Below are positions 1,725-63,610 of a DNA stretch of 64,000 bases, piece by piece. Where the stretch lies: positions 120,776,001 through 120,840,000 of the forward strand of contig NC_086105.1 of assembly GCF_963921235.1 (NCBI RefSeq). The letters run 5' to 3'. Below the pieces are notes generated by a model, which was given only the letters and a program-made list of their open reading frames with translations, was not told the origin of the DNA and searched no databases. The translations under genes and the position numbers were made by a program. Position 1 is the stretch's first letter, and each line of letters opens with the position of its first letter. The stretch is from Mobula hypostoma. Its lineage: Eukaryota.

Positions 1725-1943
1725 AAGTTATCGTAACGAGAGAGAGAAAAAGAAACAAAATTTTTTTTCCAAATTTCAGCGTTCCCTTGAAATGCTGCCA
1801 AGTGGAACAACTAATTGAGAACAGCAGCATAACCAGAGTAGAGCCTGAAAATATGCAGATGGGAAAAATATACTTTAAAACTGTATAAAATTAAACTATT
1901 CATGTCAGCACAGTCAGAGACTTCATTAAGTAAAATAGCATAC

Positions 1944-2109
1944 CTGTTGAAAGGTCATATAATGCAGTGACAGCAGTGATCAGCTGACAGCAAAACCGTG
2001 GACTGGCATGAACAATTCGCTTTAATGTCTGCACAGATCCTGGTACCAATATGCAGTAATCCTCAACAAGTACCTTTGCAAGTTTCACACAGAATACCGC
2101 ATGCGTTCG
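1944..2109 (-). CDS. INTS15: Integrator complex subunit 15 (C7orf26), coding exon 3
   Basis: RTHAVFCVKLAKVLVEDYCILVPGSVQTLKRIVHASPRFCCQLITAVTALYDLST matches recalled C7orf26; acceptor ttgcag, donor G|gtatgc; gene continues left of the window. Confidence 0.93.
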
Positions 2110-2461
2110 CTGCAAATCCAACCAATTTAATTTCAAACATTTTTAATGTTAAGTATCATTAAATGATTGATCTAACCATATTTAAAAATTAATAATACAA
2201 CACTGGCAATGGATACAATAAATCACGCAAGTAACTTGGTAAAATACAGAAAAGTTTTAATTACTAATATAAAACATTACTTTTATAAACTTGATAATTA
2301 TAAGGATTTTCTTTTGCAACCTAAATTAACAATCTCTTGTACTCCACAAACATATACAAATGATGGCAACAAATTATTAGAATTATACATTCATTATTAC
2401 AGAACAGCAATATACTTTACAATATCTTTTAAAATTCACTTTCTCATTAGGTGAAACATAC

Positions 2462-2683
2462 CTGCAACCATAATGCAGTACATTCCAAAATGGGAACACG
2501 ACAAATTGCTACTGCCATGGATACAAGTTTTCCCAACATAGCCAGTCTATTTTCATCAGCTTTATTACCCTGAGGACCAAACAGTGCAGAGAAGATGATC
2601 TGTCGAACTGCATCTTTACTCTGTTCTTGGAAGTAACTACACATGATCTCCAGCAATTGTAGCTCCTGTAATGAACTTAACCG
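2462..2683 (-). CDS. INTS15: INTS15 coding exon 2
   Basis: RLSSLQELQLLEIMCSYFQEQSKDAVRQIIFSALFGPQGNKADENRLAMLGKLVSMAVAICRVPILECTALWLQ; 222 nt, phase 0/0; acceptor ttgtaag, donor gtatgt. Confidence 0.95.
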
Positions 2684-3014
2684 CTTACAATAAAAAACAA
2701 TATAATTAGTACACAGTAGAAATATGACCTCTCAGAAGAAAGCACAATTAAAATAAATTTTAAAAAGACACACATCATTGGAAAACTAATGGCCTACAAC
2801 TTACTAAGAATAGCAGACTCACCTGCCCCCAGATCAGTTTTTTTCCCCTACTAAGCAGATACCCCCATCTAATCCTTCTTCACAGATGATAGAAATGCTT
2901 TTGGTAGCCCAACAAATCTCAGCCTAAGCCCAAACAGACTGTCAAACAGCTTGAAAATTGAAGAATTTCTCCAATATTTACAGGTATTTGAAAATTAAAC
3001 TAAATGTAATTTTT

Positions 3015-3328
3015 AGCAACACACATCAAAGTTGCTGGTGAACGCAGCAGGCCAGGCAGCATCTCTAGGAAGAGGTACAGTCCACATTTCAGGCCGAGAC
3101 CCTTCGTCAGGACTAACGGAAGGAAGAGTTAGTAAAAGATTGAAGGAACAGATTGTAGTAAGAGATTGAAGATAATCTCTTACTAACTGTTCCTTCAGTT
3201 AGTCCTGACGAAGGGTCTCAGCCTAAAACGTCGACAGTACCTCTTCCTAGAGATGCTGCCTGGCCTGCTGCGTTCACCAGCAACTTTGATGTGTGTTGCT
3301 TGAATTTCCAGCATCTGCAGAATTCCTC
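3015..3328. mobile_element. Penelope-derived fold-back element with two hammerhead motifs
   Basis: Inverted arms 3015-3141 and 3174-3300, then a 3' tail; 12-bp direct repeat ATGTAATTTTTA at 3004-3015 and 3329-3340. Confidence 0.85.
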
Positions 3329-3684
3329 ATGTAATTTTTAAATGTTTAAAACACCAGAAACCACTAAAAATGGAATTTAGTGTTATCAGAAAAATAAAAT
3401 TAAAGTTTATTCCATTTCTCCACACTAAAATCAAGAAGTCAAACAGGTATGTTTCCCATCATATGGAAATCTGGGACTTCCTCATTCTTACATGCTTATA
3501 TTAGAGTCCCAAACTTACTATCCACCATGATAAATTCTAGAGGTCTGTCATACATGAAAAGAACAAATGCTTTAAGCCTAGTCCTTATTCTCAAAAAGGG
3601 CATTGCCTGAAACGTTTAACTATTCCATTCTTTCCATGCATTTCTAGTTTGTTTTTGTAGTTCCAAAGTTTGCAAATTTCATAT

Positions 3685-9109: not shown

Positions 9110-10280
9110 TGTCATGGAAGTTGGAGATGTTACAGATAGCCAGGAAGACTGTCTAAGGATGCAGATCACATAGAAAATTGGGCAGAGTTTTGGTGGATGG
9201 AATTTAACCACCACAAATGGAAGATCATGCATTTTGGGAATTCAAAAGAAGGGCGAGTCATTTACAGCAAATGATAGGTTCTAATGAACATCGATGAACA
9301 GAAAGTCCTTGGGATTCAACTCTATAGTTCCCTGAATGGTCACACAGGGTGACAAAGATGACATAGATCAGGACACAGAACATAAAGGACACTTTATAAC
9401 AGCAGTGAGACTGCACTTGCAGTACTGTGCATTTCTGGTTACCACACCATAGTAAGCATGTGGTTGTGCTGGAGAGAATACAGAGAAGATTCACCAGCAC
9501 ATTGGCTGGATTGGAGGAGAGATGTCCCAAGAGCAGTGGAAATGGAGGGGTGGCCTGATAGTGGTATGTAAAATTATAAACAGTCAATATCTTTTACCCA
9601 TAGTGGGTATAATCACAAACAAGTGGACATGGGTTTAAAGTGAGAGAAGAGTTTTAAAGGGAATTTGAGGGAAAAGTTTTATTTGACACAGATCAACACA
9701 CACAAAATGATGGAGAAACTCAGCAGGTCAGGCAGCATCTATGGAAATTAATACAGTTGACATTTTGGGCCATGGCCCTTCTTCAGGACTAAGAAGGGAA
9801 GGGGAAGATAGCAAAGTCAAAAGGTGGGAGAAGGGGAGGGAGGCTAGTTGGAAGGTGATAGGTGAAGACAGGTGAGCAGGAGAGGTCAAGAGCTGGAGAA
9901 GAAGGAATCTGATATGAGAGGAGAGTGGATCATAGGGGAAAGGGAAGGAGGGAGGACCCAGAGGGAAATGATAGACAGGTGAGGAGGTAAAAGGTCAGAG
10001 TGGGGACTAGAGGAAGAGAAGGGGTGAATTGTTTACCAGAAGGAGAGACGATTGATACTCATGCCATCACAGATAGTGGTTGATATTTAGAACTCTGCTA
10101 CAGGAGATGATGGAGGAATTGAATACAACCATTTGCCTAGGAGATAATTAGAAAGACACTTAAAGTCAAAGAAAGATGCAGATGTACAGCAGGCAATTAG
10201 GATGAGCATTGATGGCCAAAAACAGTTGGCATAGATGCAGCAGGCTAAAGGTTCACTTCTGTTCTGTAACTCTGCGGTTA
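9110..10280 (+). mobile_element. Old CR1 3' portion, interrupted by a Penelope insertion
   Basis: Decayed WxMEFN, cacttgcagtactgtg and agaagattcacca motifs; resumes after about 10070. Confidence 0.7.
9694..10070 (-). mobile_element. Penelope-like element 3' end (pLTR) with degenerate hammerhead at 9755-9790
   Basis: aacacacacaaaatgatggagaaactcagcaggtcaggcagcatctatgg terminus and a purine-rich body like the reverse complement of 24300-24688. Confidence 0.8.
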
Positions 10281-14854: not shown

Positions 14855-15210
14855 TATAAAATGCTGGAGGAACTCAGGAGGTTAGGGACCATCTATGGAG
14901 ATGAATAAACAGTCAACTTTTTGGGCCGAGACCCTTCATCAGGACTGGAAAGGAAGGGAGAAGATGCCAGAATATGGAGGTGGGAGGAAGGGAGGGAGGT
15001 GGTGATGGGCAAAACCAGGTGGGTGGGTGAGGAGGAAGTAACGGGATAGGTGGAGAAGGTAAAGAGCTGAAGAAGAAGGAATCTGATAGGAAAGGAGAAT
15101 GGACCATGGGGGAGAGGTGAGGAGGAGGGACACAGGGAGGTGGTAGGCAGGTAAGGAGAAGAGGTAGAGACCAGGGTAGGGAATTGAAGAAGAGGAAAGG
15201 GGGAAGGGAA
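14855..15210 (-). mobile_element. Penelope-like 3' end with degenerate hammerhead at 14911-14946
   Basis: aaaatgctggaggaactcagg...gggccgagacccttcatcaggact followed by a purine-rich body. Confidence 0.8.
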
Positions 15211-20810: not shown

Positions 20811-21144
20811 CTTTGATGGTGACATGGAGAAAAAGCTACACTTTAAATTAAAATCCATTCAGTATTTAATGAATGGCGCAAGAAAAAACAAACTGCTGAA
20901 GGAACTCAGCAATTCAGGCAGCATCTGGGGAAGCAAAGAGATAGTCGACTTTTCTGGTGCACCACGCTGCAGCTCGATGACATTTAGCTCATACGGGGGA
21001 CTGAGGATTGACAGATAGGAGCTACAGGGAGGCAGTCACCACTAGGTTGCAGGAGGCAGGTAAATGGGTGACTGTCAGGAGAAGGAAGGGAAATAAGCCA
21101 CCAGTACAGGGTATCCCTGTGGTTGTTCCCCTCAATAATAAGTA

Positions 21145-21970: not shown

Positions 21971-23883
21971 TATACCATTTTGAATACTATTGAGGGGGAC
22001 CACCTACCGAGGGGAGTCACAGCGACTGGGTCTCCGGCACTGTCTAGCACTGTGGCTCAGAAGAGAAAAGAGGTGAAGAGGACTGCAGTAGTGATAGGAG
22101 ATTCCATAGTTTGAGGTATAGAGAAGAGAATCTGTGGATGTGATAGAGACTCCCGGATGGTATGTTGCCTCCCAGGTGCCAGAGTCAAGGATGTCTCAGA
22201 TCGGGTCCACAACATTCTAAAGGGGAGGGTGAGCAGGCAGAAGTCTTGGTACATATTGGCACCAATGACATAGATAGGAAAGGCAAGGACGTCCTGAAGA
22301 GCGACTTTAGGGAGCTAGGTAGAAAGCTGAAAAGCAGGACCGCCAGGGTAGTAATCTCTGGATTGCTGCCTGTGCCACGTGCCAGTGAGGGTAAGAATCG
22401 GAGCATTTGTCATATAAATATGTGGTTGAGGACTAGCGCAGGGTACAGGGGTTCAGATTTCTGGATCATTAGGACTTCTGCTGGGGAAAATACGACCTGT
22501 ACAAAAGGGACAGGTTACACCTGAACCCGAGGGGGACCATTATCCTTGCGGGCAGATTTGCTCGAGCAGTATAGAAGGGTTTAGGCTAATTTGGCAGGGG
22601 GATGGGAACTAGAGTGATAGGGCTATGGATGAAGCAGTTGGTTTACAAACAGACGCAGTGTGTAGAGGGACTGCTAGCAAAGACAGGCTGATGATAGGGC
22701 AAGATTGCAGTCAATAGGATGAGTTGCAATGTAAAAAGGGGACAAAATCAGAAAAGGGTGATGAATATGGACTGAAAGTGTTATATTTGAATACACGCAG
22801 TATACGGAATAAGGGTAGGTGGACTTACAGCACTTTGAGATGGGCAGGTATGACATTGTGGGCATCACTGAGTGTTGGCTGAAAGAAGATTATAGCTTGG
22901 AGCTTAACATCCAAAGATACACTGTATCAAAAGGACAGGCTGGTAGGCAGAGGGAGTGGGGTGACTCTGTCGGTAAAAAATGAAATCAAATGGTCAGAAA
23001 GAGGTGACATAGGATCAGTAGATGTAGAATTGTTGTGAGTAGAGCTAAAAAACTGCAAGGATAAAAAGGCCCTAATGGGAGTTATATACAGGCCTCCAAA
23101 TAGTAGCAAAGATATAGGCTATAAATTGCAACAGGAGATAGAAAATGCATGTCAAAGGGGTAATGTTATGATAGTCATGGAGGATTTCAACATGCAGGTA
23201 CATTGGGAAAATCAGGTTGGTGCTGGATCCCAAGAGGGGGAATTTGTAGAATGCCTTAAAGATGGCTTTTTAGAGCAACTTGTGGTAGAGCTCGCTAGGG
23301 GATCAGCTATTCTGGATTGGGTGCTGTGCAATGAACTGGAATTGATTAGAGAGCTTAAGGTACAGGAACCCTTAAGGGCCAGTGATCATAATATGATAGA
23401 ATTGACCCTGCAAATTGAGGGGGAGAAGCTAGAGTCAGATGTATCAGTGTTACAGTGGAGTAAAGCGAATTACAGAGACATGAGAGAGGAGCTGGCCAAA
23501 GTTGATTGGAAGGGGACACCAGCAGGGATGACAGCAGAGCAGCAATGGCTGGAAATTCTGGGAGCAATTCAGAAGGTGCAGTATATGTACATCCCAAACA
23601 AGAAAAAAGCAGGATGATGCAGCCGTGGCTGACAAAGGAAGTCAAAGCCAACATAAAAGCCAAGGAGAGTATACAATAGACCAAAAATTAGTGAGAAGTT
23701 AGTGGATTGGGAAGCTTTTTAAAATTAACAGAAGGCAACTAAAAAGTCATAAAGAGGGAAAAGATGGAATATGAAGATAAGCTAGCAATAATATTAAAGA
23801 GGATACCAAAAGTTTCTTCAGATATACAAAGAGTAAAAGGGAGGTGAGTGTAGATATCAGTCCGCTGGAAAATGAGCTAGAGA

Positions 23884-24689
23884 CTGCTACACTGCGAAGT
23901 CTCTTCCAAGGATGCCGACTCTGAAGCGGAACAAGTGCCACACCTGCCCCTACACCTCCTCCCTCACTACCATTCAGGGCCCCAAGCAGTCCTTCCAGGT
24001 GAGGCAACACTTCACCTGTGAGTCTGTTGGGGCACCTACTGTATCTGGTGCTCCCGGTGTGGCCTTCTATATATTGGTGAGACCCGACACAGATTGGGAG
24101 ACCGTTTTGCCGAGCACCTATGTTTCATTTGCCAGAAAAAGTAGGATCTCCCCATGGCCACCCACTTGACTTTCACTTTCCATTCCCATTCCAACATATC
24201 TGTCAATGGCATCTCCTATTGTCGCAAAGAGACCACACTCAGGTTGAAAGAGCAACACCTGATATTCCGTCTGGGTATCCTCCAACCTGATGTATAAACA
24301 TCGATTTCTCGAACTTCCAGTAATGCCCACCCCCTTCACCATCCCCTTTTCCCTCTCTCACCTTATCTTCTTACCTGCCTATCACCTCCCTCTGGTGCTC
24401 CTCCCCATTTTCTTTTTCCATGGCCTTCTGTCCTCTCCTATCAGATTCCCCCTTCTCCAGCCCTCTTTCACCAAACAACTTCTCAGATCTTTGCTTCACC
24501 CCTCCCCCCTTCCAATTTTGCCTATCACCTTGTGTTTCTTCCTCCCCTCCCCCCACCTTCTAACTCTGACTCCTCAACTTTGTTTTCCTCTGGTCCCTGT
24601 GAAGGGTCTCGGCCCGAACCATCGCCTAGACACCTTCCATAGATGCTGCCTGACCTGCTGAGTTCCTCCAGCATTTTGTGTGTGTTACT
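23884..24689 (+). mobile_element. Penelope-like element: GIY-YIG endonuclease C-terminus plus pLTR
   Basis: KRNKCHTCPYT...HFTCESVG..YCIWCSRCGLLYIGETRHRLGDRFAEHL across a frameshift; flanked by TAGAGA repeats; degenerate hammerhead near 24592-24627. Confidence 0.9.
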
Positions 24690-26048
24690 TAGAGAGGTAG
24701 TTATAGGGGACAAGGAAATGGCAGACGAACTGAATAAGTATTTTGCATCAGTCTTCACTGTGGAAGACTCTAGCAGTATGACAGAAGTTCGAGAGTGTCA
24801 GGATGCAGAAGAGAGTGAAGTTGCCATTACTAGGGAGAAGGTGCTTGGGAAAATGAAAGATCTGAAGGTAGATAAATCACTTGGACCAGATGGTGTACAC
24901 CCCAGGGTTCTGAAAGAGGTGGCTGACGAGATTGTGGAGGCATTAATATTGATCTTTCAAGATTCACGAGATGGTTCCAGAGAACTGGAAAAATGCAAGT
25001 GACACTCCACTCTTCAAGAAGGGAGATAGGCAGAAGAAAGGAAATCATAGGCCAGTTAGTCTGACTTCATTGGTTGGGAATATGCTGAATGTGATTGTTA
25101 AGGATGTGATTTCACGGTAGTTGGAGACACATGATAAAACAGGCCAAAGTCAGCACTGTTTCCTCAAGGGAAATCTTGCCTGACAACATCCGTTGGAATT
25201 CTTTGAAGAAATAACAACCAGGATAGACAAAGGAGAATCGGTGGATGTAGTGTACTTGGGTTTTCAGAAGGCCTTTAACAAGGTGCTGCACATGAGGCTG
25301 CCTAACAAGTTAAGAGCTCATGGTATTACAGGAAAGATACTAGCATGGACAAAGCAGTGGCTGATTGGCAGGAGGCAAAGAGAGTGAATAAAGGGAGCCT
25401 TTTCTGATTGGCTGCCAATGACTAGAGGTGTTCACTAGGGGTCTATGTTTGGACTGCTTCTTTTTACATTGAACGTCAATAATCTGGTAAATCTGTAGAA
25501 TTTGATGTCACAGGCGGCTCCGGAGGCCAAGTAATTGGCTATACTTAAGGCAGAAATTGATAGATTCTTGATTAGTCAGGTATGAAGGATTACAGGGAGA
25601 AGACAGGAGATTGGGGCTGAGAAAAAAAATGGATCAACCATGATGAAATGGCGGAGCAGACTCCATGGGCTAAACAGCATAATTCTGTTCCTATATCTTA
25701 GGGTCTTATAGTAAATCTGATTCTGATTCTGAGACTGAAGAATGCAGAACAAAAGGAAACAAGATCCATAAGGAAGAAAACAAGAAAGAGAGTTATAGAT
25801 CTCAGAATACAAAGGAAATTTGAAACATGAAAAAGGATAGCAAAGGAAATATCAAACTAAGTAGAAATGGAGATTGAAGAGTTAGAAAGACATGACAGAA
25901 TTATGCACATAAATAGTGGAGACAAGTAAACTCCAAGAATCAAAGAAATACATAGCTCAAGTTATGAGATTGAGAATCCTGACAAATCGCATAATACACA
26001 ATAATAATAATAATAATATATTTAGCTGAATAATATTTGATGACGTAC

Positions 26049-31741: not shown

Positions 31742-34700
31742 AAGTCAAGTTTATTATCATTTAAATATATATATGTATATAACGTATAGAACCATACAAC
31801 ATTATATAGAAACAAGCTATTTCTTCGAGCCAGGGAGTAAAGCACAGTAGTACACATAACACACAATAACTTATGAAGGTACGTATAAGTCTACAGATGA
31901 ATCACACATAAATCACAAGCTAAAGTGCATTAATTTTAAATATTGGAAGGTACGGAACAGATTAACCAGTGACACTTTGAATACGATGCGGCCAGGAGTG
32001 CAGAAACCTAATGGCCTGGGGGAAGAAACAGTTTCTCATCCTGACCATTCTTGTTTTTATGCATCATAGTCTCCTGCCTGATGGTAGAAAGTCAAAGAGG
32101 ATGCTGGATGGCTGGGTGGGATCCTTAATAATAGTAAGGGCCCTACATATGCAGCACTCCTGATAAATGTCTCCGGTAGATGGTAGAGAGACCCCTACGA
32201 TCCTCTCAGCTGTTCTCACAGCTCACAGTCCTTTGTAGGGACTTCTGGTCCAATACTCAACTCCTCCCATACCAGATGGAGGTACAACCTGTCAGGATGC
32301 TCTCAATGGTGCTCCTGTAAAACACAGTTAAAATGGGGGCTAGGAGCCTTGTCTGCCTCAATCTTAGGAAGTGGAGGTGATGCTGTGCCTTCTTGTTCAG
32401 GGAGATAATATTAAGGGACCGGGTGAGGTCATCCATGATGTGAACTCTCAGGAACTTAGTGCACTTAACTCTCTCTACATAGAGCCATGTACTCGCAGAG
32501 GGGGATGGTTCGTCTACACCTTCTTTAACTCCACAATGATTTCCTTTGTCTTCTCCAAGTTCAGGCTTAGGTGGCTGTTCTCACACCAGCCGCTCCGCTT
32601 CCTCTCTATACTCCGTTCATCATCGTTCTTGATAAGGCCCACCACTGTTGTGTCACCTGCAAACTTAATGACACGGTTTGAGCTGGATCCTGTCATGTGT
32701 CAGCAGTGTGACCAGTAGCGGACTGCTCAACGTAATGGGACTAGAGATGTTGCTGCCCACACGGTCTGACTGTGGCCTTACTGTTAAGAAGTCCAGTATC
32801 CAATTGCAGAGGGAGGTGTTGAGACCCAGTGAGGACAGTTTTCCCACCAGTTTCTGGGGTATGACGGCGTTGAACGCCAGACTGAAGTATATAAACAGCA
32901 GTCTGGTATATGAGACCCCATTTTCCAATTGGGACAGGACAGAGTGGAGAGCAGAGGCTATTGCATCATCAGTGGATCAACTTGAGTGAGAATTGAACTG
33001 GAAAGGATCTAGTGTAGCCGGGAGAAAGGCTTTAATGTGCTCCAGGACCAGCCGCTCAAAGCATTTCATTATGGTTGATGTTAATGCCACCAAACAATAG
33101 TCATTTAGGCAGGTTACTGTCTCGTTCTTTGGCACTGGAATGACGGCCACCTTGAAAGCCAAAGGGACAATGGATTGTTCCAGAGAGATGTTGAATATAT
33201 CCGTCAGCTGGGCTGTAGTCTTTCAGAACCGGACCTGGTATATTATCGGGCCCCGCAACTTTGCATGGGTCGACTCTGGCCAGGGTCTGCCTCACCTCGG
33301 CTTCAGCCATACAGAGTATCTGTTCACCTGGGGGAAGGGGTTCCTTCCTCACCAGCACTTTTTTCTGCGCATCAAACTGGATATAGAGTATATTGAACCT
33401 CTCAGGAAGTGAAGCATCCTGGTAAAGCATCATGAGTCCTGATGAAGGCCCGAAGCGTCGACTATACTCTTTTCCATAGATGCTGCCCAGCCTGATGAGT
33501 TCCTCTAGTGTTCTGTGTGTGTGTCACAATCCCTCAGCCTGGCACGGACCTTTGCAGTAAGCCATAGCATCTGATTTGCCCGCACCTGGATGTGTTTCAT
33601 GATGGTAACATTCTCAGTACACTTCTCTATGTAGCTGGTCGCAGAGTCCACATATTCCTCAATATTAACATGGTTGCCATAGGTAGCAGCCTCCCTGAAT
33701 ATTCTCCAGTTCCTATTATCAAAGCAGTCCTGTGGTGCAGAGACTGCACTGTCGGACTATGTTTCTGCCACCTTTAGAACTGGTTTGACCCGTTTGATCA
33801 ATGGTTTGTATGCTGGAATTAACATGACAAATACGTGATCTGTGAGGCCAAGGTGGGATTGAGCAACTGCTTTATAGGCACTTGGTATGTTATTGTAAAC
33901 CAGGTCTAGTGTATTTTCTATAGTGTATACCTCTGGTAGCAAAATCAACATGCTGGTGGAATTCAGACAGGACTGTCTTTAGGTTCACATGGTTAAAATC
34001 GCTTGTGATGATTAAAATACCTTCAGGGTGCTTAGTTTGAAAATACTGATAGCGCTGTATACCAACACAGTGCATCGCTGGCATTAGCAGAGAGGGTGTG
34101 GTGATATATACAGCTGCCAATGCAATTGTGGTGAACTCCCTCAATAAATAAAATGGTTTGCACTTCACAAAAGTGAACTCAATCATTGGTGAACAATGGG
34201 GCACCACTGTTAAAGCGTCTGTACACCAGTTTTTATTTATGTAAATATAGATATTACCACCGCATGCCTTGTCTGAGATTGCTGGATTCCTGTCAACCTG
34301 AAACGCACTGAAACCCTCCAGCTGGATGACTGTGTCTGGGATGGATTCATGAAGTCTTGATTCCATGAGAATGTGTGCACAGAAGTTTCTACCTCACTGT
34401 TTCAGTCTCAGGCACAGGTAGTCCAGTTTATTTTCAAGTGAGCGGACGTTTGCCAGTAAGAATGAGGGGAGAGCTGACCTGAAGGGCTTCAACCTAAGTT
34501 GTTCCTGAATTCCAACGTGTTTTCCCCCTTTTCGTTTCTTTGCGCTCCTCTTCCTATGGTATCACTCACGGAGGTCTGTAGCAGGCAATGGTGTGCACAA
34601 TAAGCCCAGACTGCCGAGCTCCTCTGCAGTTCAACAGTTCATAATGAGGTAGAATTGCAGTGTACAGTATATTTCATAGCTGGTTGCATTTTCCGATCGT

Positions 34701-35649: not shown

Positions 35650-35970
35650 TCCCCTCCACCCCTCTATTCTCCACTCTGGCCCTTTTATTTTCTTGTCACT
35701 TACCTATTACATCCCCCTGGGTCGCCTCCTCCTATAGTCCACTCTTCTCTCCTATCTGATTCTTTCTTCTCCAGCCCTCGACTTTTCCTACCCACCTGGC
35801 TTCACCTATCACCTTTCAGCTATCCTTCCCCTCTTTCCACCTTTTATTCTGGCATCTTCCCCCTTCCTTCTCAGTCCTGAAGAAGGGGATTAGACTGAAA
35901 CATTGACTGTTTCTTCATTTCCATAGATGCTGCCTGGCCTGCTGAGTTCCTCCAGCACTTTGTGTGTGCT
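35650..35970 (+). mobile_element. Penelope-like 3' end with hammerhead motif at 35873-35908
   Basis: Pyrimidine-rich body, agtcctgaagaagg..ctgaaacattgact, pLTR terminus. Confidence 0.8.
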
Positions 35971-37429
35971 GAGTAGAATAGCCTGTTTGAGGAAGAGTAA
36001 TGAAAGAGGAGAGAATCCAAATAGAAGTGGACCAGCACACCATGAATACACAAAATAGAAAACGTTCAGCAAGTTCACAAAATACTAAATCTCAGAAGAT
36101 AAGAGACTGCATAAGAAGTGGAACTAAGTGTCTTATTAAACGCAGGAGCTTATGTTGGACTTGACTTTTTCCGTTTTAACCGAGAAAGCTGAAAAAAGGG
36201 TCAAACTATTTTTGAATTTTTATCTCAGCCATAAACATCCTTGCTTGCAATAATTATCAACCAGGCAGATTTTCTTGGCTGAACTGCAAATGATTCGGCC
36301 CACTGCTCTGACTCAGTCCCCACCCCTACGTTTAAGTTTATGTGGATGCCAGTTCATACTGTCTTAGGACTTTCAATCTCAGAGTCAGGTGACAGGGCAC
36401 AATTACATCCCACACAACCTATCACAGATGCTTGTTTTCTGAATATTCTGGCAGCCTTTGACAGAGCAATGTTCCGTTGCCAGTCTGAGGGGTTCTGTGA
36501 ATGCTTACATAGCTCTGCTAGTCAGACACAAGTGAAACGAATAAACTATTTTAATTAAGAAACAATAAATACATTATTTGTTTTTCTATAAAAGTATTCA
36601 AGTTATTAAAACATTATAGCATGAATAAATATTCAAATGCACTAATAAACATTCATTAGTATTTAAAATGACAAATGAGGATTTCCATCCTACAGTAGGT
36701 TGGATGATGCAGAGGAATCCTAGACTTATTTTCCGATTCCATGTGGAATTCAGTGGTAGGACACAGTACGGTATGGTCTTAGATGCAAGTGGCAGCTTCC
36801 TTACAGATTTGACACCTACAGCACTGTAATGAGCCAATATTTTCACTCATTTTTCTTTAAAAATACCATATGTGGCTTTCAAAACACATATTAACTGCAG
36901 ATAATAAATAAATCATCTTATATGAAACCAAGTTATGAAGAAACAGCCAGAAGTTTTAAACTAGTACTGATTAAATGTGAATTATCTGCAAAGCATTACT
37001 CAGTCAGTACAAACTGAGCAACTTCATTTGTCACTTTAAAACCAATCACAAGTTGTCATCTATGGTTACCTTGTATGAATATAAGGTGATTACATAGTCA
37101 TAGTCATACTTTATTGATCCCAGGGGAAATTGGTTAATTTTTAAATCATACCCCATAGTTTAGATGAAGATAACACAAAATTTCTGTAAGTAATAAATTA
37201 AATATCAATTTTGTGCCTCGTTACAGAGAAACAGTATTCTTGATCTCCCAGGTTGGTGCTAATGTTGAGAACTAAATACAAGGCAATTTGAAGTAATCAG
37301 CTTTACTCAATGAAGCCACAAAGAAAACAAATTACAAAAATATTTTTCATTATTTCTGGATAAAAGAAAAATGTTGGATATAGTGGTGGTAAAATAAACA
37401 ATCATGGTGCTTATGTAAAGACTATAAGT

Positions 37430-38085
37430 GGCTATATTTTCATCAGGAGTTGAGGAGATTTGGTTTGTCACCTAAAACACACAAAAACTTCTACAAATGT
37501 AACATGGAGAGCATTCTCACTGGCTGAATCACTGTCTGGTTTTGGGGGGAGGTGCTACTGCACAGGATCGTAGTAAGCTGTAGAGAGCTATAAGATTAGT
37601 CAGCTCCATCATGGGTACTAGGCATCCAAGGTATCTTCAAGGAGCCTCAGAGAAGTGGCTTTATCAAGGTCCCCCACCACCAAGGACATGCTCCCTTCTC
37701 ATTGTTACCATCAGGAAGGAGGTACAGAAACCTGAATGTACACACTCAGTGATTCAGGACAGCTTCATCCCCTCTCCCATCCAATTTCCAAATGTCATTC
37801 AATCAATGAATACTACCTCACAAATTCTTTTTAAAAATTCTGTTTTTTGTACTACTTATCTTAATTTATCATGAATTGCATTGTACTGCTGCTGCAAAGT
37901 CAACAAATTTCACGACAAATGCCGGTGATATTAAGCAACACACATAAAAAACGTCAACTGTACCTCTTCCTATAGATGCTGTCTGGCCTGCTGCGTTCAC
38001 CAGCAATTTTTATGTGTGTTGCTTGAAATTCCAACATCTGCAGATTTCCTCGTGTTTCCGGTGATATTACGCCTGATTCTGATTG
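37430..38085 (+). mobile_element. Rex1/Babar 3' portion with a Penelope mini-element (37934-38057) in its tail
   Basis: ctatattttcatcaggagttgaggagatt motif; insertion flanked by 12-bp TSD CCGGTGATATTA. Confidence 0.8.
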
Positions 38086-38645: not shown

Positions 38646-39977
38646 AAATATATCCATAAAGTTATCAAATTTAACTTGAATAGCTTTGTGGAAATTTTGG
38701 AGCCTATCAATGCTTTCCCTAAAGAAAACAGGAAATCCTATCTGCAACTTGAAGATGAGTAATGGACTAGGAGCTGGTACTCCTTACTGATACTAAGCTC
38801 TCCGTTTAGCTGTCCAAGGCAAGAATAAGGTTGTATTCTGTCCCCTCTCATAGTTATCAACTTCTATAACAGTTAAAGTTTGTGCAGAGACGTAATCACT
38901 TGACACTTCTGCAATTCAAACTAGAGTAAACATGCCACCAGAAGTCCAGGTAAAAGATTGCAAAAGTAACAAATACAAAGGTAAATTGCTAGAACTGTTT
39001 GATGACTTTCAGGCCAGATCTGAAGATTTGCTGAACTTCAGACTCTGCTTCTCCTACCTTGATTATGATTGATGAAGGAGTGAAGGAGTCTTATTTTCAA
39101 AAAGATGATTATGGAAACATTCACTGTATAGATAGAATTACCGGAACTCCAAGAAGTGCAAGCTCTGAACATGATCTGCATGTTAAGAGTCTACAAATGA
39201 ATTCTGGAAGCAATTACCAGGACCAGTATCCTCATTACAAGAATAGCATCATATGACTCATTTTAATTAACAGCATATTGTTTTGAATCACAGTATTTTT
39301 TGATGAAATTCATCAAATTAGTATTTCCTTGACATTTGGCTGAGAAACCCTAGATTATTTGAGAACTTGCTAAGAACATTCCCAAACACAACCATATTGG
39401 AGAATCACAAAGCCTCCAATTCCACCGTAAATAGGATAGAGGAAGATTATGCTTAACAACTTTCTAGAAGTTGGAGTGTCTGCAGTAAAAATGCATACCT
39501 TGCAGCTCTCAAACTTCTGAATATCATTGAATTGCTCTGAAGGTTAGCAAGTTTAGCCACACTGCTATAAATTAAATGGTTTAGTCTGTTAGGTGGCACA
39601 GGAACAATTTGGCATTTAATTGGAATTTAAATGAAGACAATTGCACAAATAAGCTTGTACAGCACATGGAAAGGACACAAGGTCAAAAGTATACCTTCTA
39701 AAGATATAAAGGTCAATTTTCTATTGGTATATGGCAATTGACAATCACTATATTACTGTTTTTACTGGAGATGATCCACATACTGGCAGTAAAAGGTGCA
39801 CAGGCCTTGTACATTTAACATATTAGGGTTGGTATTTGTGATCAGTAATGATAGCACTGTATCAATAGAGAACGCAGTAGAGTAGGAATGGTGAATGCAG
39901 TACGAAGTGAGAATTGCCACTGATGTACTAGATAGTGTAGTGTTATAGTGACATTGGGTAGGGTAATGGTATAAGCT

Positions 39978-40170
39978 ACACTCACAAAACGCTGGAGGAA
40001 CTAAGGAGGAAAGGCAGCATCCATGGAAAAGAGCAGTCCTGATTAGGGGTTTCGGCCGGAGGCGTCAACTGTTTGCTCTTTTCCATCGATTTTGCCAGGC
40101 CTGCTGAGTTCATCCAGCGTTCTGTGTGTTGCTTTGGATCTCCAGCATCTGCAGATTTTCTCTTGCTTGT
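39978..40170 (+). mobile_element. Penelope-derived fold-back element with degenerate hammerhead in its loop (40035-40070)
   Basis: Arms cacaaaacgctggaggaact..catccatggaaaagagca and tgctcttttccatcg..tccagcgttctgtg, plus tail tccagcatctgcagatttt. Confidence 0.8.
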
Positions 40171-40457
40171 GAATGGTACAAGCTGTGGGGATGTTGGGTA
40201 GGGTAAGAGCACTGTGGTGATACCAGAGAGGATACTGGCACTTCATTGCCGCTAATAGTGATACCAGGCAGTCCACTGATGCCAGGTAGGCAGAGAGCAT
40301 TAAAGGGTTTAGCACTAGCCAGTGCCCTGGTGCCGGGCAGGCGAAGAACGGGGGCCGAGCCTACAATTCCTAATTTCCCTCCAATATTTGGTACCGGTCC
40401 AGTTAATTCCGGCCTGCACCCGGAGGCCGCCACCCGCTGGACCCCGGTGTCACAGAC

Positions 40458-40497
40458 CTGAACAAAACCCTCGAACCGCCTTCAACAGCGCCGCCAT
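40458..40497 (-). CDS. ECI1: ECI1 exon 1 (start codon)
   Basis: AAAATGGCG Kozak; MAALLKAVRGFCS(G) transit-peptide-like; phase-1 donor G|gtctgt; the 7 exons sum to 924 nt (307 aa + stop). Confidence 0.85.
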
Positions 40498-40528
40498 TTT
40501 TTGCCGGGGAACAGAAACCGGAAGCTGT

Positions 40529-40621
40529 GGGGCGGAAGCAGTGCTGCCTTTCGAGCTGCGGGGCGGAAGCAGTGCTGCCTTTCGAGCTGCGGGGCGGAAG
40601 CAGCTCTGCCTTTCGAGTTGC
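40529..40621. repeat. 3 x 31-bp tandem repeat GGGGCGGAAGCAGTGCTGCCTTTCGAGCTGC
   Basis: Copies at 40529 and 40560 are identical; the copy at 40591 has 3 substitutions. Confidence 0.97.
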
Positions 40622-41008
40622 GATGGAACTGCAGCTTGTGTTGTCCGGCCTGCAAATCCACGATGATCCTGCAGATGGTGAGGGGGAGTCCTTTCGAAAA
40701 CCGTACTTTGTGCTTTATCTCCGAAATGGTCGTACGTTCGCTGATTGCTCCCGTCCAGTTTCAAGTATGCACATAGCACCAGATGGATTTTAACTTATGC
40801 CGCTGTTCATTTGATTTGTGTGATTGAAAACACCTCTGTTACTTTCTACGACGTATTTGCAAACTATGAAAAACATTTTGTTTGAATAAATGGTCCGTAA
40901 AAGTGGAGTGGCAATTTAGAGAGAAGAGGAAGTTCTCTTCAGTGGATTACAAGGGGTGGTTAATAAGTTCCTGGCCTAAGGTGGAAGGAGTCAATTTTAG
41001 AAAACCTA

Positions 41009-41196
41009 AACACGAGGAAGTCTGCAGAAGCTGGAAATTCAAGCAACACACACAAAATGCAAGTGGAACGCAGTAGGCCAGGCAGCATCTATAGGAAGAA
41101 TCCTGACGAAGGGTCTCGGCTCGAAACGTTGACTATACTTCTTCCTACAGATGCTGCCTGGCCTGCTGCGTTCCACCAGCATTTTGTGTGTGTTGC
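41009..41196. mobile_element. Penelope-derived fold-back element
   Basis: Arms 41041-41100 and 41139-41198; tail 41009-41040; 13-bp TSD TTTAGAAAACCTA at 40996-41008 and 41197-41209. Confidence 0.88.
41099..41134 (+). ncRNA. Minimal type-I hammerhead ribozyme motif with intact core
   Basis: AAUC-CUGACGA-A-GGGU[CUCG]GCUC-GAAA-CGUU/GACU; predicted cleavage after 41130; transcription and activity not shown. Confidence 0.7.
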
Positions 41197-41289
41197 TTTA
41201 GAAAACCTAGCACATTTATTTTTTAACATAGTTCCCTCAAACATGTACACACTTAGTCCAGTGGTCGTGGAGCATACAGATCACTTCTT

Positions 41290-42254
41290 TAGAACATAGA
41301 ATAGTACAGCACAGTACAGGCCCTTCGGCCCACAATGTTGTGCCAACCCTCAAACCCTGCCTCCCATATAAGCCCCCACCTTAAATTCCTCCATATACCT
41401 GTCTAGTAGTCTCTTAAACTTCACTAGTGTATCTGCCTCCACCACTGACTCAGGCAGTGCATTCCACGCACCAACCACTCTCTGAGTAAAAAACCTTCCT
41501 CTAATATCCCCCTTGAACTTCCCACCCCTTACCTTAAAGCCATGTCCTCTTGTATTGAACCGTGGTGCCCTGGGGAAGAGGCGCTGGCTATCCTCTCTCT
41601 ATTCCTCTTAATATCTTGTATACCTCTATCATGTCTCCTCTCATCCTCCTTCTCTCCAAAGAGTAAAGCCCTAGCTCCCTTAATCTCTGATCATAATGCA
41701 TACTCTCTAAACCAGGCAGCATCCTGGTAAATCTCCTCTGTACCCTTTCCACTGCTTCCACATCCTTCCTATAGTGAGGCGACCAGAACTGGACACAGTA
41801 CTCCAAGTGTGGCCTAACCAGAGTTTTATAGAGCTGCATCATTACATCGTGATTCTTAAACTCTGTCCCGCGACTTATGAAAGCTAACACCCCATAAGCT
41901 TTCTTAACTACCCTATCCACCTGTGAGGCAACTTTCAGGGATCGGTGGACATGTACCCCCAGATCCCTCTGCTCCTCCACACTACCAAGTATCCTGCCAT
42001 TTACTTTGTACTCTGCCTTGGAGTTTGTCCTTCCAAAGTGTACCACCTCACACTTCTTCAGGTTGAACTCCATCTGCCACTTCTCAGCCCACTTCTGCAA
42101 CCTATCAATGTCTCTCTGCAATCTTCAACAAACCCCTACACTATCTACAACACCACCAACCTTTGTGTCATCTGCAAACTTGCCAACCCACCCCTCTACC
42201 CGCACACCCAGGTCATTAATAAAAATCACGAGAAGTGGAGGTCCCAAAACAGAA
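41290..42254 (-). mobile_element. Young 5'-truncated CR1
   Basis: Clean ORF WQMEFNLKKCEVVHFG...RPHLEYCVQFWSPHYRKD, KFADDTK, (ttctatg)n tail. Confidence 0.95.
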
Positions 42255-45935: not shown

Positions 45936-46092
45936 AACATTATCTACAGTAACTTTGTGGCCCGGGAGTGTTACCTTCTGTAACTTTGTGGCCCGTGAAA
46001 ATTACCTACAGTAACTTTGTGGCCTAGGAACATTATCTGCAGTAACTCTGTGGCCCAGGAATGTTACCTGCAGTAACTTTGTGGGCTGGGAT
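45936..46092. repeat. 5 x 31-bp minisatellite
   Basis: GTAAC recurs at 45949, 45980, 46011, 46042 and 46073; consensus AAYRTTACCTRCAGTAACTTTGTGGCCCRGG. Confidence 0.93.
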
Positions 46093-50830: not shown

Positions 50831-50998
50831 AATGATGACGTTTTTGCTCTGACTGAGATCCTCCACTGTGTATGGTGTCTCACAATGATGACGTTTTTGC
50901 TCTGACTGAGATCCTCCACTGTGTATGGTGTCTCACAATGATGACGTTTTTGCTCTGACTGAGATCGTCCACTGTGTATGGTGTCTCACAATGATGAC
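50831..50998. repeat. 3 x 53-bp tandem triplication inside BEL pol
   Basis: AATGATGAC at 50831, 50884, 50937 and 50990. Confidence 0.95.
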
Positions 50999-61285: not shown

Positions 61286-62969
61286 CGTGTGCAAGCACAC
61301 TTGGCCTTGCTTTGCACACCAACTATACAGCTATACGCATTCCCTCAGGCGCTTTATATGGGCATACACCAGAAGAACAGTGAAGGGCTATAAACCATTC
61401 TGTTTGTGGTACATACAAATTGACATGTGTGTTAATAAATCAGAACTGATACAGTCAATGACACTCAGCACCATGGAGAAATCCAAATATTGCAAAGATG
61501 CCTTTAACTTCACCTTTTGCTCTTGAAACAGAACTTTGGCAAGGTTTTGCAGTAGTAAAGATTAACTATGAGATATTAGCCAGGTCTAGAAGGGAAGACA
61601 TTTGAGAGAAGATTCAAAGTCTTGGCATTGATTAAGCAATCCATGCTTTCTTCTGAGGTCAAACTTGCACTTGACTATAGTAGTCATAGTCATACTTTAT
61701 TGATCCTGGGGGAATATTATATTGGAGATATTCCTGCTGAGGTGCATAAGTCTCAGAGTTTGTTTCTCCATGAATTTCATTTCGGAAAACTGTTCTTTGA
61801 ACATATTGGTTGAATTTGCCCCATTACTGAGGATTCCTATTTCCAGTAGCTTGTCCTACTCTGCATGCCCTCAGTTAATTTTCCAAGTAATGCTGCACTC
61901 CAATTGTGCAATATGATTGGGACAAAATAATCAGGTGCTTGAAAACAACACTTGAAATGAGAGCAACGACCTTCAGCACTTGACACACAATTATCTGTTG
62001 ATTTTTAAATACTTCCTCTAAGTAGCAGTTGTACATGCTCTCTTCTGTCGCTGAATATGTGTACAGATGTGCAAGGTTAAGACAGGTGTAAACCAGAATT
62101 TGGGCTTCAATTTAACAACTCTATCTCAACCAATAATACATTCTGATTGATATTATGTGCAGTGCTGTAATTATAATATTAAGCTCAACATGAGACAAAC
62201 ATTCAATCCTGTGCTAATATGAATTGCTCATGGGGAATTGGTTCAGTTATGATCACTGTAATATTGTTTGTCCTCTGAACTTATTTAGCATCAAGTTTAA
62301 GCATATAAGAGATAAATGAGAATATATATTATAAAATCTCTCTTGGAAGTAGAATTGTATATTATCCATAAGATCCACCATAATTTGCAAAGCTTTATTT
62401 GTAATTTCTAAGAATTTCAGTCAAACTGTTCAAATAATGGAAAGCCAAAATAAAACTTAAAATTGTCAATGGTCTACAAATGGGTTCAAATGGAATACAT
62501 TGTACAACAATCTCTGTTTCATAAGTCTTGAGGTGAAATAATCCATATTAGAACAATTCCTTCTATGAAAACTTTTCCTCTGATTTTTCCTGATAATCCA
62601 AGGGCTATGCAATTTCTGAAAGATCCACAAACAGATAAAAAAAAATCCTTCACAATTCAGCTTCTCAAAATCTTACAGTGTTGAAATTTCTATCAAACAC
62701 TCTTAAATTTGTTTATGGAATGCAACAAACTACCCCTTAAAATCAATGTATACACAAAAATGCATTACTACATGATGTAAATAGTTACAACTTAACATAT
62801 GTTAGAATCGTATGTAAGACTCTAACCATTCAAGCATGTTTGGTGCCAAAGTATCAAAAGTTAGTTTGTAAAATAGGGATCAAGTAGCAATTGCATAAAT
62901 ATTGAACAGATTGCCCTTTTGTTATTCATACTATGCATATTTATTATTTATTGTTTTCTTGTATTACAG

Positions 62970-63610
62970 TCTGTAATGTGAAATCAATGATGCATTTTCC
63001 CAATTCTTCCATTGAAAATTATGCAACTTTCAGCAGAGGCTTTTCAACTGGGCTCTTTGAAATGACTATCTGCTCTTGGATCAGCACCAATTCAAATTAC
63101 TTGGGAACCATATTATCCTATGCCACAGAAGATAATGACAACAAATTGGTACTGCACGGCAGAAATACAAGCAAACAAAGCACTATTCATTTCGTAATTG
63201 GAGATCCAGCATTCAGGGAACTTCCTGTGATTCCACTCTTAGATGGCCGCTGGCATCATGTCTGCATTATATGGTCTTCCTTTGAGGGTAGATACTGGTA
63301 CTATATAGACAGACGTCTGATAGCAGCTGGATCCAAATTTCAAAAAGGATATGAGATTCCAGCTGGTGGAATACTTATAATAGGTCAGGAACAGGATAAA
63401 ATGGGAGGGGGATTTGATAATACTGAGTCCTTTGTGGGAAGTTTGGCTGGATTTACAATTTGGAACCGTGCTTTGTCTCCTGGGGAAATCTCGGGCATTA
63501 CTACAGGAAAGGCATTACCTGGAGGCAGAGTTTTAACTTTCAATGATATTTCCACTCTCAGTGGTGCTATTCAGCATTTTAATTGTACATGCCTAGATGA
63601 TTGTTATTAA
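62970..63610 (+). CDS. PTX4: PTX4 exon 3 (pentraxin domain)
   Basis: CNVKSMMHFPN..TICSW..SYATEDNDNKL..WHHVCIIWSS..GQEQDKMGGGFD..WNRALSPGEI..CTCLDDCY*; acceptor ttacag. Confidence 0.96.

What the first reader, a model, noticed from the sequence alone, without database searches (positions are those of the whole stretch)
41009..41209. Core-intact minimal hammerhead ribozyme at the tip of a 60-bp hairpin, about 600 bp upstream of ECI1
Seen: AAUC-CUGACGA-A-GGGU(CUCG)GCUC-GAAA-CGUU-GACU at 41099-41134 has both catalytic boxes, a stem II, an extra A after A9, a palindromic ACGU in place of stem III and an allowed NUH (GUU). The element's inverted arms (41041-41100 / 41139-41198) extend stem I into a long helix, and the ~190-bp unit has a 13-bp TSD. 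Established: Penelope-like elements carry such minimal type-I hammerheads, thought to cleave as dimers. Inference: this is a ribozyme-capped mobile hairpin, oriented so that divergent (upstream antisense) transcription from the ECI1 CpG promoter would read it in sense and could be cleaved.
Basis: partly seen in the sequence, partly recalled or inferred. Interest (0 to 1): 0.8.

Follow-up and report, generated by a model that had tools for sequence, protein, structure and literature searches.

The report
Penelope-element fold-back scrap with hammerhead
The hairpin with a hammerhead ribozyme motif near the ECI1 promoter is real, but it is one short, dead-on-arrival insertion of a very abundant Penelope-like retrotransposon family whose ends are already known to carry such ribozymes, so it is ordinary for this genome.

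Summary
That covers both catalytic boxes, a 4-bp stem II, the extra A after A9, the ACGU palindrome, the GUU triplet, the 60-nt arms and a perfect 13-bp TSD.

The motif is not a chance match. It is the only intact minimal hammerhead in the window (0.05 expected per shuffle). It also matches the consensus of a repeat family with about 10 copies in these 64 kb and huge depth in DNA runs of three related species.

The family shows the published signatures of Penelope-like element (PLE) insertions:
- an inverted 5'-truncated copy lies against a direct copy;
- a 34-nt "tail" sits at one end only;
- TSDs are 12-13 bp;
- the minimal dimer-type hammerhead sits near the 3' end.

The hairpin is therefore a by-product of integration, not a designed stem I. 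Stem I keeps only 2 native pairs.

This copy has weakened pairs, no partner ribozyme in cis, and no transcription evidence. The ECI1 upstream-antisense cleavage idea is unsupported and was barely testable here.

One point remains open. A second, divergent hairpin at 39978-40171 has the same 38-nt loop geometry, so such hairpins may form at a hot spot or be re-copied as units.

The scan has already noted this family many times in this genome. Low interest: a new member of a known kind.

The parts
40996..41008 (.). Left copy of the target-site duplication (TTTAGAAAACCTA)
   Evidence: Perfect 13-nt direct repeat with 41197-41209. The first two T could also be element-derived, so the TSD is 11-13 bp.
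41009..41042 (-). 34-nt PLE 'tail', the 3' extension present at this end only
   Evidence: It matches the tails of other copies at 3298-3330, 38024-38057 and 40134-40171 in the opposite orientation. Many genomic copies continue with this tail where the right arm stops (table 7, loose ends behind 41197-41199). A 30-40 bp one-sided tail is a PLE signature (PMC8557442, PMC11167929).
41043..41100 (-). Body of the tail-bearing, 5'-truncated copy. It starts about 9 nt downstream of the family's hammerhead cleavage site and carries no ribozyme.
   Evidence: It forms the inverted repeat with 41139-41196 and aligns to the family 3' ends.
41101..41138 (+). Loop: 5' part of the tail-less direct copy. It holds the minimal hammerhead (core 41103-41130, predicted cleavage 41130/41131).
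   Evidence: The majority consensus of 9 copies is a perfect min-HHR with helix I GUC/GAC and a GUC triplet.
41139..41196 (+). Body of the tail-less direct copy, ending at ...GTGTTGC
   Evidence: The same tail-less end abuts the TSD at 3016, 37935 and 39978.
41197..41209 (.). Right copy of the target-site duplication

Best explanation
The unit 41009-41196 is a 188-bp, heavily 5'-truncated insertion made by the machinery of a Penelope-like retroelement (PLE) or of a non-autonomous derivative of its terminal repeat. It consists of two copies of the element's 3' end placed head to head. One, on the minus strand, started at the distal reverse-transcription start and so carries the 34-nt tail. The other, on the plus strand, started at the proximal start and so has no tail, and it runs back just far enough to include the family's hammerhead. 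Inferred mechanism: the two 3'-OH ends of a 13-bp staggered break each primed a cDNA, as shown in vitro for an Anolis PLE. One cDNA then jumped onto the end of the other, which produced the hairpin and the TSD. The hammerhead is inherited from the family, where it is thought to act as a dimer on tandem element transcripts. At this locus it is a passenger: monomeric, weakened (C11.2 to U, C17 to U, helix I cut to 2 bp), and most likely inactive with no role in ECI1 expression. Shown here: family membership, architecture, TSD and intact core. Inferred: the priming and jump steps, and the inactivity.
For: There are about 10 family copies in 64 kb. The consensus of 9 hammerhead segments is a perfect PLE-type min-HHR: CUGANGA, an unpaired A, G10.1-C11.1, GAAA, palindromic ACGU and GUC. 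These are the features listed as typical for metazoan PLE-HHRs in PMC4209133. Eight of the nine copies have lost core bases, and three of these lost G12, which sits in a CpG. That indicates neutral decay after insertion. Four fold-back insertions in the window share the same layout: a tail at one end only, the other end stopping at ...GTTGC, and TSDs of 12-13 bp. Craig et al. describe exactly this structure (inverted 5'-truncated copy, one-sided 30-40 bp tail). Frangieh et al. show cleavage and extension of both target strands and two RT start sites that bracket the tail. Summed depth over the element is about 10^6, against 15-85 on the unique flank, in DNA runs of three related species. A relative's contig carries the insertion at the same site. 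Two contigs join 40998 to 41200, skipping exactly 201 nt, as uninterrupted copies of the host repeat would. The ribozyme-compatible fold is 4.3 kcal/mol above the loop's MFE, and stem II has about 5% pair probability.
Against: No PLE ORF (RT plus GIY-YIG) is linked to this terminus in the window. The only RT, at 9-1573, is LINE-like. PLE membership therefore rests on the architecture and the ribozyme type. A second, about 30% divergent hairpin at 39978-40171 has the same 38-nt loop and the same break points. Independent random truncation does not predict that. No cleavage assay was done, and stranded RNA data were not available. Inactivity is inferred from published in vitro work on other min-HHRs.
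Confidence: 0.85

Rival explanations
1. The hairpin with the hammerhead in its loop is itself a propagating non-autonomous unit, which is the reader's 'mobile hairpin'. It would be transcribed from either strand and re-copied whole by the PLE enzyme, rather than formed anew at this integration.
For: Two hairpins that differ by about 30% in sequence (41009-41196 and 39978-40171) both have exactly 38 nt between the arms. In both, the direct copy starts at the 5' edge of the hammerhead and the inverted arm starts 8-9 nt past the cleavage site. In one the tail is on the ribozyme-sense arm and in the other on the antisense arm, as expected if either strand can serve as template. Earlier unchecked notes in this genome describe similar hairpin mini-elements (s1-141886; s1-144962).
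Against: The other two fold-backs in the window have different junctions: 137-nt arms at 3005-3310, and a 16-nt inverted piece at 37934-37949. The four arm mismatches of this copy are private to one arm each, when compared with other copies, as expected for decay after de novo formation. A helix of -114 kcal/mol is a poor RT template. A shared hot spot, such as a discrete RNA 5' end at the hammerhead edge (copy 33434 also starts there), would explain the shared geometry equally well.
Confidence: 0.2
2. The ribozyme is active at this locus and cleaves promoter-upstream antisense transcripts of ECI1, either by trans-dimerising with other PLE hammerhead RNAs or helped by the long helix.
For: The core is intact and the orientation is right for plus-strand divergent transcription from the CpG island. 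Family sequences are abundant in an RNA run. The predicted dimer of the loop region is 9 kcal/mol more stable than two monomers.
Against: Published single min-HHRs do not cleave, and dimers cleave poorly. Stem II has two G-U pairs and helix I has only 2 native bp. An alternative pairing sequesters C3 and U4 in the MFE. The C17-to-U change extends the palindrome to AACGUU, which would mispair A14 in a dimer. Other copies decay freely, so there is no sign of selection. No RNA contig covers the unique flanks, although that run also lacks exon 1.
Confidence: 0.03
3. A chance hammerhead look-alike, a TIR-type DNA transposon (MITE), or a microRNA precursor hairpin.
For: Rfam gives sub-threshold matches of the hairpin to several miRNA precursor models (best 53 bits against a gathering score of 85). 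The unit has long terminal inverted repeats and a TSD.
Against: The motif is the family consensus, not a one-off, and is expected 0.05 times by chance. The ends are asymmetric, with the tail on one side only. The junctions vary between copies, and most copies are not hairpins at all. The miRNA hits are generic long-helix matches far below threshold, on both strands.
Confidence: 0.02

Closest known systems
Minimal type-I hammerheads of metazoan Penelope-like elements (Cervera and De la Pena 2014, PMC4209133; Lunse, Weinberg and Breaker 2017, cited in PMC6765202)
   Same: It has both catalytic boxes, an unpaired base between A9 and 10.1, a G10.1-C11.1 pair, no helix III but a palindromic ACGU that allows a dimeric helix III, a short helix I, and a location near the element's 3' end. 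These motifs are massively dispersed, mostly as single motifs in truncated copies, and pairs on opposite strands 100-700 bp apart are also reported.
   Different: Stem II is 4 bp rather than the 6-8 bp common in Schistosoma and Drosophila PLE-HHRs. This copy has lost the 5' strand of helix I. The host is a cartilaginous fish (a devil ray according to an earlier scan note), a family I did not find described by sequence.
PLE insertion architecture: inverted 5'-truncated copy plus one-sided 30-40 bp tail (Craig et al. 2021, PMC8557442; Frangieh et al. 2024, PMC11167929)
   Same: There is an inverted copy abutting a direct copy, a 34-nt tail at one end only, and a TSD. The two alternative ends correspond to the two adjacent RT start sites.
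   Different: This is an extreme miniature, 92 + 96 nt, with no ORF and no pLTR body. The published cases are kilobase-scale units.
Non-LTR retrozymes of animals (Cervera and De la Pena 2020, PMC7229834; Li et al. 2026 preprint, doi 10.64898/2026.07.22.740005)
   Same: These are short non-coding hammerhead-bearing repeats related to PLE terminal repeats. The older copies in this window are discrete units of about 340 bp, close to the 363-bp mean reported for the one chondrichthyan sampled.
   Different: Retrozymes are defined by tandem arrays whose transcripts self-cleave and circularise. No tandem array of this family exists in the window, and this copy is a fold-back, not a tandem.
L1 twin priming (Ostertag and Kazazian 2001; from my own knowledge, not checked here)
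   Same: Both 3'-OH ends of a staggered break prime cDNA synthesis, which gives an inverted/direct pair flanked by a TSD.
   Different: In L1 the inverted segment comes from an internal part of the RNA and the event is occasional. Here both arms start at the element's 3' start sites, and the layout is habitual for the family.

Membership tests
Hammerhead ribozyme, PLE-type minimal type I | Catalytic boxes C3-U4-G5-A6-N7-G8-A9 and G12-A13-A14 plus A15.1 | tested here: met
   CUGACGA at 41103-41109 and GAAA at 41123-41126.
Hammerhead ribozyme, PLE-type minimal type I | Helix II closed by G10.1-C11.1, with one unpaired base after A9 | tested here: met
   A41110 is unpaired. G41111-C41122 pairs, followed by G-U, G-C and U-G, with loop CUCG. 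The stem is weak, with about 5% pair probability. The family consensus has GCCC.
Hammerhead ribozyme, PLE-type minimal type I | No helix III loop; palindromic 15.1-16.1 that allows a dimeric helix III; U16.1-H17 cleavage site | tested here: met
   ACGU at 41126-41129 and H17 = U at 41130. The family consensus has C17.
Hammerhead ribozyme, PLE-type minimal type I | Helix I of 4-5 bp flanking the core | tested here: not met
   Only 41102:41131 and 41101:41132 pair in register, and the next position is C x A. The family consensus has 5 bp (CAGUC/GACUG), but the 5' strand was lost here by truncation. The long arms pair out of register after a 6-nt bulge.
Hammerhead ribozyme, PLE-type minimal type I | Match to a curated hammerhead covariance model | tested here: not met
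   No Rfam hammerhead family reported at E up to 10 on 1.2 kb, nor at gathering score on the whole window. A motif without helix III scoring poorly on these models is my own explanation, not something I tested.
Hammerhead ribozyme, PLE-type minimal type I | Mg2+-dependent site-specific self-cleavage | not testable with these tools
   This needs in vitro transcription of monomer and dimer constructs.
Penelope-like element (EN+ clades) | ORF with a telomerase-like RT and a GIY-YIG endonuclease linked to this terminus | tested here: inconclusive
   No such ORF is in the window. The RVT_1 ORFs at 9-1573 have LINE-type motifs, and an Exo_endo_phos_2 ORF lies at 23075. The rest of the genome could not be searched, and two metagenome pattern scans found nothing.
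Penelope-like element (EN+ clades) | Inverted 5'-truncated copy adjacent to a direct copy | tested here: met
   41009-41100 (minus) against 41101-41196 (plus). Three more cases lie at 3016-3328, 37934-38057 and 39978-40171.
Penelope-like element (EN+ clades) | [quoted passage not shown] | tested here: met
   A 34-nt tail lies at 41009-41042. The right end stops at ...GTTGC. All four fold-backs follow the same rule, and many genomic copies carry the tail after that point (table 7).
Penelope-like element (EN+ clades) | Target-site duplication | tested here: met
   The repeats are 13/13 here, 12/12 at the 3016 copy, 12/12 at the 37934 copy and 12/13 at the 39978 copy.
Non-LTR retrozyme | Tandem head-to-tail repeats of a hammerhead-bearing unit | tested here: not met
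   TRF finds no array of this family in the window. All copies are solo or fold-back.
MITE / TIR DNA transposon | Symmetric terminal inverted repeats and a TSD of fixed length and sequence rule | tested here: not met
   The ends are asymmetric by 34 nt. Most family copies have no inverted arm at all.
microRNA precursor | Match above a curated threshold | tested here: not met
   The best match is MIR842 at 53.4 bits against a gathering score of 85. Hits occur on both strands and to unrelated families.

The most novel reading that the evidence does not exclude
The recurrent geometry would be a fossil record of how PLE RNA is processed or how its RT jumps templates in vivo, or would mark a hairpin lineage that parasitises the PLE enzyme. 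That geometry is a direct copy beginning exactly at the 5' edge of the hammerhead, an inverted arm beginning 8-9 nt past the cleavage site, and a 38-nt loop in two divergent hairpins. In older copies the hammerhead edge abuts a polypyrimidine-AG that looks like a 3' splice site, as in the Drosophila virilis Penelope intron. A genome-wide map of 5' break points relative to the ribozyme in this very copy-rich genome could then address two open questions: whether PLE hammerheads act in vivo, and where PLE template RNAs begin.
Probability: 0.15. Interest if true: 0.45.

Novelty: new member of a known kind. Interest (0 to 1): 0.15.

Why it matters
For this locus it matters little. The element is a neutral scrap of a retrotransposon family that litters the genome, and nothing ties it to ECI1 regulation.

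It is useful as a very clean miniature of the PLE integration product: two start sites, a one-sided tail, a head-to-head junction and a perfect TSD, all within 214 bp. It also shows that a cartilaginous fish carries a huge family of PLE-type minimal hammerheads.

The family's abundance makes the genome a good substrate for a census of break points. Such a census could test in vivo ribozyme action and template-jump rules of PLEs, which are still unsettled in the literature (PMC11167929 found no RNA ends at the cleavage site).

Tried and rejected
1. Rfam. There was no hammerhead hit at E up to 10 and none at gathering score in the window. The only hits were sub-threshold miRNA-precursor matches, which I rejected as generic long-helix hits.

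2. Link to an autonomous PLE. Pfam on the ten longest of the 17 ORFs of 130 aa or more and reading of ORFs in 1-3100 found only LINE-type RT and endonuclease.

3. Related DNA elsewhere. Two exact-pattern scans of metagenome contigs for the consensus hammerhead found nothing.

4. Empty-site paralog in the window. BLAST of the joined flanks found none. The only hint is two contigs in a DNA run that skip exactly 201 nt, with only 24 nt on the shorter side.

5. Transcription and cleavage at 41130/41131.
   - The runs were available only as strandless contigs.
   - The RNA run had no contig on the unique 40200-40940, which includes the presumed exon 1, so the negative result says nothing.

6. Snap-back self-priming as the origin of the hairpin. 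I considered and rejected it because the tail sits on the arm that would have been copied from a tail-less cDNA.

7. Lunse et al. 2017 could not be read because it is not held.

8. Look-up of earlier notes by sequence and by place returned nothing.

9. A covariation test on the 9 window copies was not run. The copies are few and mostly decayed, so it would add nothing to the published evidence.

Full report
**Observation**

On the plus strand:
- CUGACGA lies at 41103-41109 and an unpaired A at 41110.
- Stem II is GGGU/GCUC with loop CUCG (41111-41122).
- GAAA lies at 41123-41126, followed by CGU and U41130.
- The predicted scissile bond therefore lies between 41130 and 41131.

The repeat finder gives arms 41041-41100 and 41139-41198 (60 nt, 93% complementary, 38 nt apart). 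It also gives a perfect 13-nt direct repeat at 40996-41008 and 41197-41209. The 188-nt unit folds at -113.9 kcal/mol, z = -13.

I wrote a descriptor after the published min-HHR. It requires both boxes, an optional unpaired base, a stem II of at least 3 bp, a self-complementary 15.1-16.1 stretch and H17. It hits only this site in the window, on either strand. In 200 dinucleotide shuffles the mean is 0.05 hits.

Rfam reports no hammerhead match, even at E up to 10. Those models include a helix III that this motif lacks, which I take to be the reason.

**It is a family, not a one-off**

BLAST of the unit against the window finds related segments at these positions:
- 3016-3330
- 9694-10024 (minus)
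- 14858-15202 (minus)
- 20888-20954 (minus)
- 24351-24690
- 33435-33522
- 35661-35972
- 37934-38057
- 39978-40171

I aligned the nine segments that cover the ribozyme. Their majority consensus is a textbook PLE-type minimal hammerhead:
- helix I CAGUC/GACUG;
- CUGANGA, then an unpaired A;
- stem II GGGU(CUCG)GCCC;
- GAAA, then CGU-C and the cut.

Eight of the nine copies have lost core bases. Three lost G12, which sits in a CpG. Others lost A6, G8, stem II or H17. Genomic copies therefore decay freely. The finding's copy is simply the one in this window whose core happens to survive.

Even this copy differs from the consensus:
- C11.2 is now U, which makes a second G-U pair in stem II.
- C17 is now U, a CpG transition.
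- The 5' strand of helix I is lost.

**Architecture**

The left arm does not end at 41041. Bases 41009-41042 are the reverse complement of a 34-nt extension. Other copies carry that extension after ...GTGTTGC (3298-3330, 38024-38057, 40134-40171). The right arm stops at ...GTTGC (41196) and abuts the TSD directly.

The unit therefore has two parts:
- a tail-bearing copy on the minus strand (41009-41100), truncated about 9 nt downstream of the cleavage site;
- a tail-less copy on the plus strand (41101-41196), truncated at the 5' edge of the hammerhead.

The three other fold-back insertions in the window obey the same rule. Each has a tail at one end only, the other end at ...GTTGC, and a TSD of 12/12, 12/12 or 12/13.

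This is the published PLE insertion structure. [quoted passage not shown] Frangieh et al. showed three things for an Anolis PLE protein (PMC11167929):
- it cleaves and extends both target strands;
- it starts reverse transcription at two adjacent internal sites;
- the sequence between those two sites is the tail.

Cervera and De la Pena list four features as typical of metazoan PLE hammerheads: the unpaired base after A9, G10.1-C11.1, the palindromic 15.2-16.2 and a short helix I. They also note pairs of motifs on opposite strands 100-700 bp apart (PMC4209133).

**Most likely origin (inference)**

I infer the following sequence of events:
1. A 13-bp staggered break was made.
2. The plus-strand 3'-OH at 41008 primed a cDNA from the distal start, which includes the tail. 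That cDNA reached about +9.
3. The minus-strand 3'-OH at 41197 primed a cDNA from the proximal start. That cDNA ran through the ribozyme to its 5' edge.
4. The first cDNA then jumped onto the 3' end of the second and copied it.

This gives the observed plus strand: antisense tail and body, then the sense hammerhead and body. Simple snap-back self-priming does not fit, because the tail lies on the arm that would have been copied from a tail-less strand.

**Abundance and age**

I laid contigs of three DNA runs and one RNA run on 40200-41900.
- Summed word depth is 15-85 on the unique 40200-40940 and about 10^6 across the element and the repeats to its right. This holds in all three species, so the family is very abundant. 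The tool warns that this depth is not a copy number.
- One species matches the unique flank perfectly.
- A second species (about 2% divergent) has a contig running from 40200 into the element to 41036, so the insertion predates their split.
- A third species (about 9% divergent) has a contig that aligns only to 40949.
- Two contigs join 40998 to 41200, skipping exactly 201 nt. That is expected from uninterrupted paralogs of the older repeat into which the element inserted (depth is already high from about 40941). The evidence is weak, with only 24 nt on the shorter side.
- Loose-end consensus sequences confirm the family hammerhead 3' half upstream of 41149. They also confirm the tail after 41198 in many other copies.

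**Function at this locus**

The gene is on the minus strand. Evidence: an ECH_1 exon at about 26.1 kb, a CpG island at 40.25-40.7 kb, and a plausible exon 1 with ATG at 40497. Divergent transcription would indeed read the motif in sense. Nothing else supports activity:
- Single min-HHRs gave no detectable cleavage in vitro, and dimers gave only low activity.
- The nearest same-strand family member (40036-40073) has a dead core.
- The ribozyme-compatible fold of the loop is 4.3 kcal/mol above the MFE, which pairs C3 and U4 elsewhere. Stem II pairs have about 5% probability.
- The C17-to-U change extends the palindrome to AACGUU, which in a dimer would tie up A14.
- The RNA run laid had no contig on the unique flanks. 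It lacked the presumed exon 1 as well, so this negative result is uninformative.

**An open point**

The hairpin at 39978-40171 is about 30% divergent from this one. It nevertheless has the same 38-nt spacing between arms and the same two break points, and its tail is on the opposite arm relative to the ribozyme. Copy 33434 also begins at the hammerhead's 5' edge. Earlier unchecked notes mention further hairpin mini-elements in this genome.

Either the break points are hot spots, for example a discrete RNA 5' end, or such hairpins are re-copied as units. I put that at about 0.2. The two other fold-backs in the window have different junctions, and the arm mismatches here are private to one arm each. 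Both points favour formation at integration.

**Verdict**

This is a new member of a known kind: PLE minimal hammerheads and PLE fold-back insertions. The same scan has already noted the family many times on other DNA of this genome. Interest is low.

Noticed in passing
window 39978-40171: A second PLE fold-back lies next to the ECI1 CpG island. Its arms are 39980-40035 / 40074-40129, again with exactly 38 nt between them, and the loop holds a decayed hammerhead. It has a 13-nt TSD with one mismatch (39965-39977 / 40172-40184). The tail is on the ribozyme-sense arm, the opposite of the finding.
   Followed up: partly
window 35845-35875, 9792-9815 (minus), 14948-14975 (minus): In the older copies of about 340 bp, a polypyrimidine run ending in YAG directly abuts the 5' strand of hammerhead helix I. 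It looks like a 3' splice site. Cervera and De la Pena report that the Drosophila virilis Penelope intron ends at that same position.
   Followed up: no
window 40523-40622: There are 3.2 tandem copies of a 31-bp GC-rich unit (94% matches) inside the CpG island, just upstream of the presumed ECI1 start codon.
   Followed up: no
window 40941-41289 (minus the insertion) and 41290-41900: The PLE scrap sits inside another high-copy repeat, since depth jumps from about 17 to about 10^5 at about 40941. A further very abundant SINE-like repeat starts at 41290. Many contigs in all three DNA runs join PLE 3' ends (41191-41199) to 41290, with unknown letters between.
   Followed up: no
window 9-1573 (+) and 23075-23617 (+): These are LINE-type reverse transcriptase fragments (RVT_1, 1.7e-19) and an endonuclease fragment (Exo_endo_phos_2). 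They are not PLE-type.
   Followed up: partly
window 62933-63610 (+): This ORF has a Pentaxin domain (1.6e-29), probably an exon of a pentraxin-family gene.
   Followed up: no
window 50831-50998 and 45939-46091: There are two more tandem arrays: 53 bp x 3.2 at 99% matches, and 31 bp x 4.9 at 79% matches.
   Followed up: no
window 37934-38057: This is a 124-bp PLE insertion with a 12-bp TSD. Its direct copy begins inside the GAAA box, 6 nt before the cleavage site, and is preceded by a 16-nt inverted piece of the tail-less end.
   Followed up: partly
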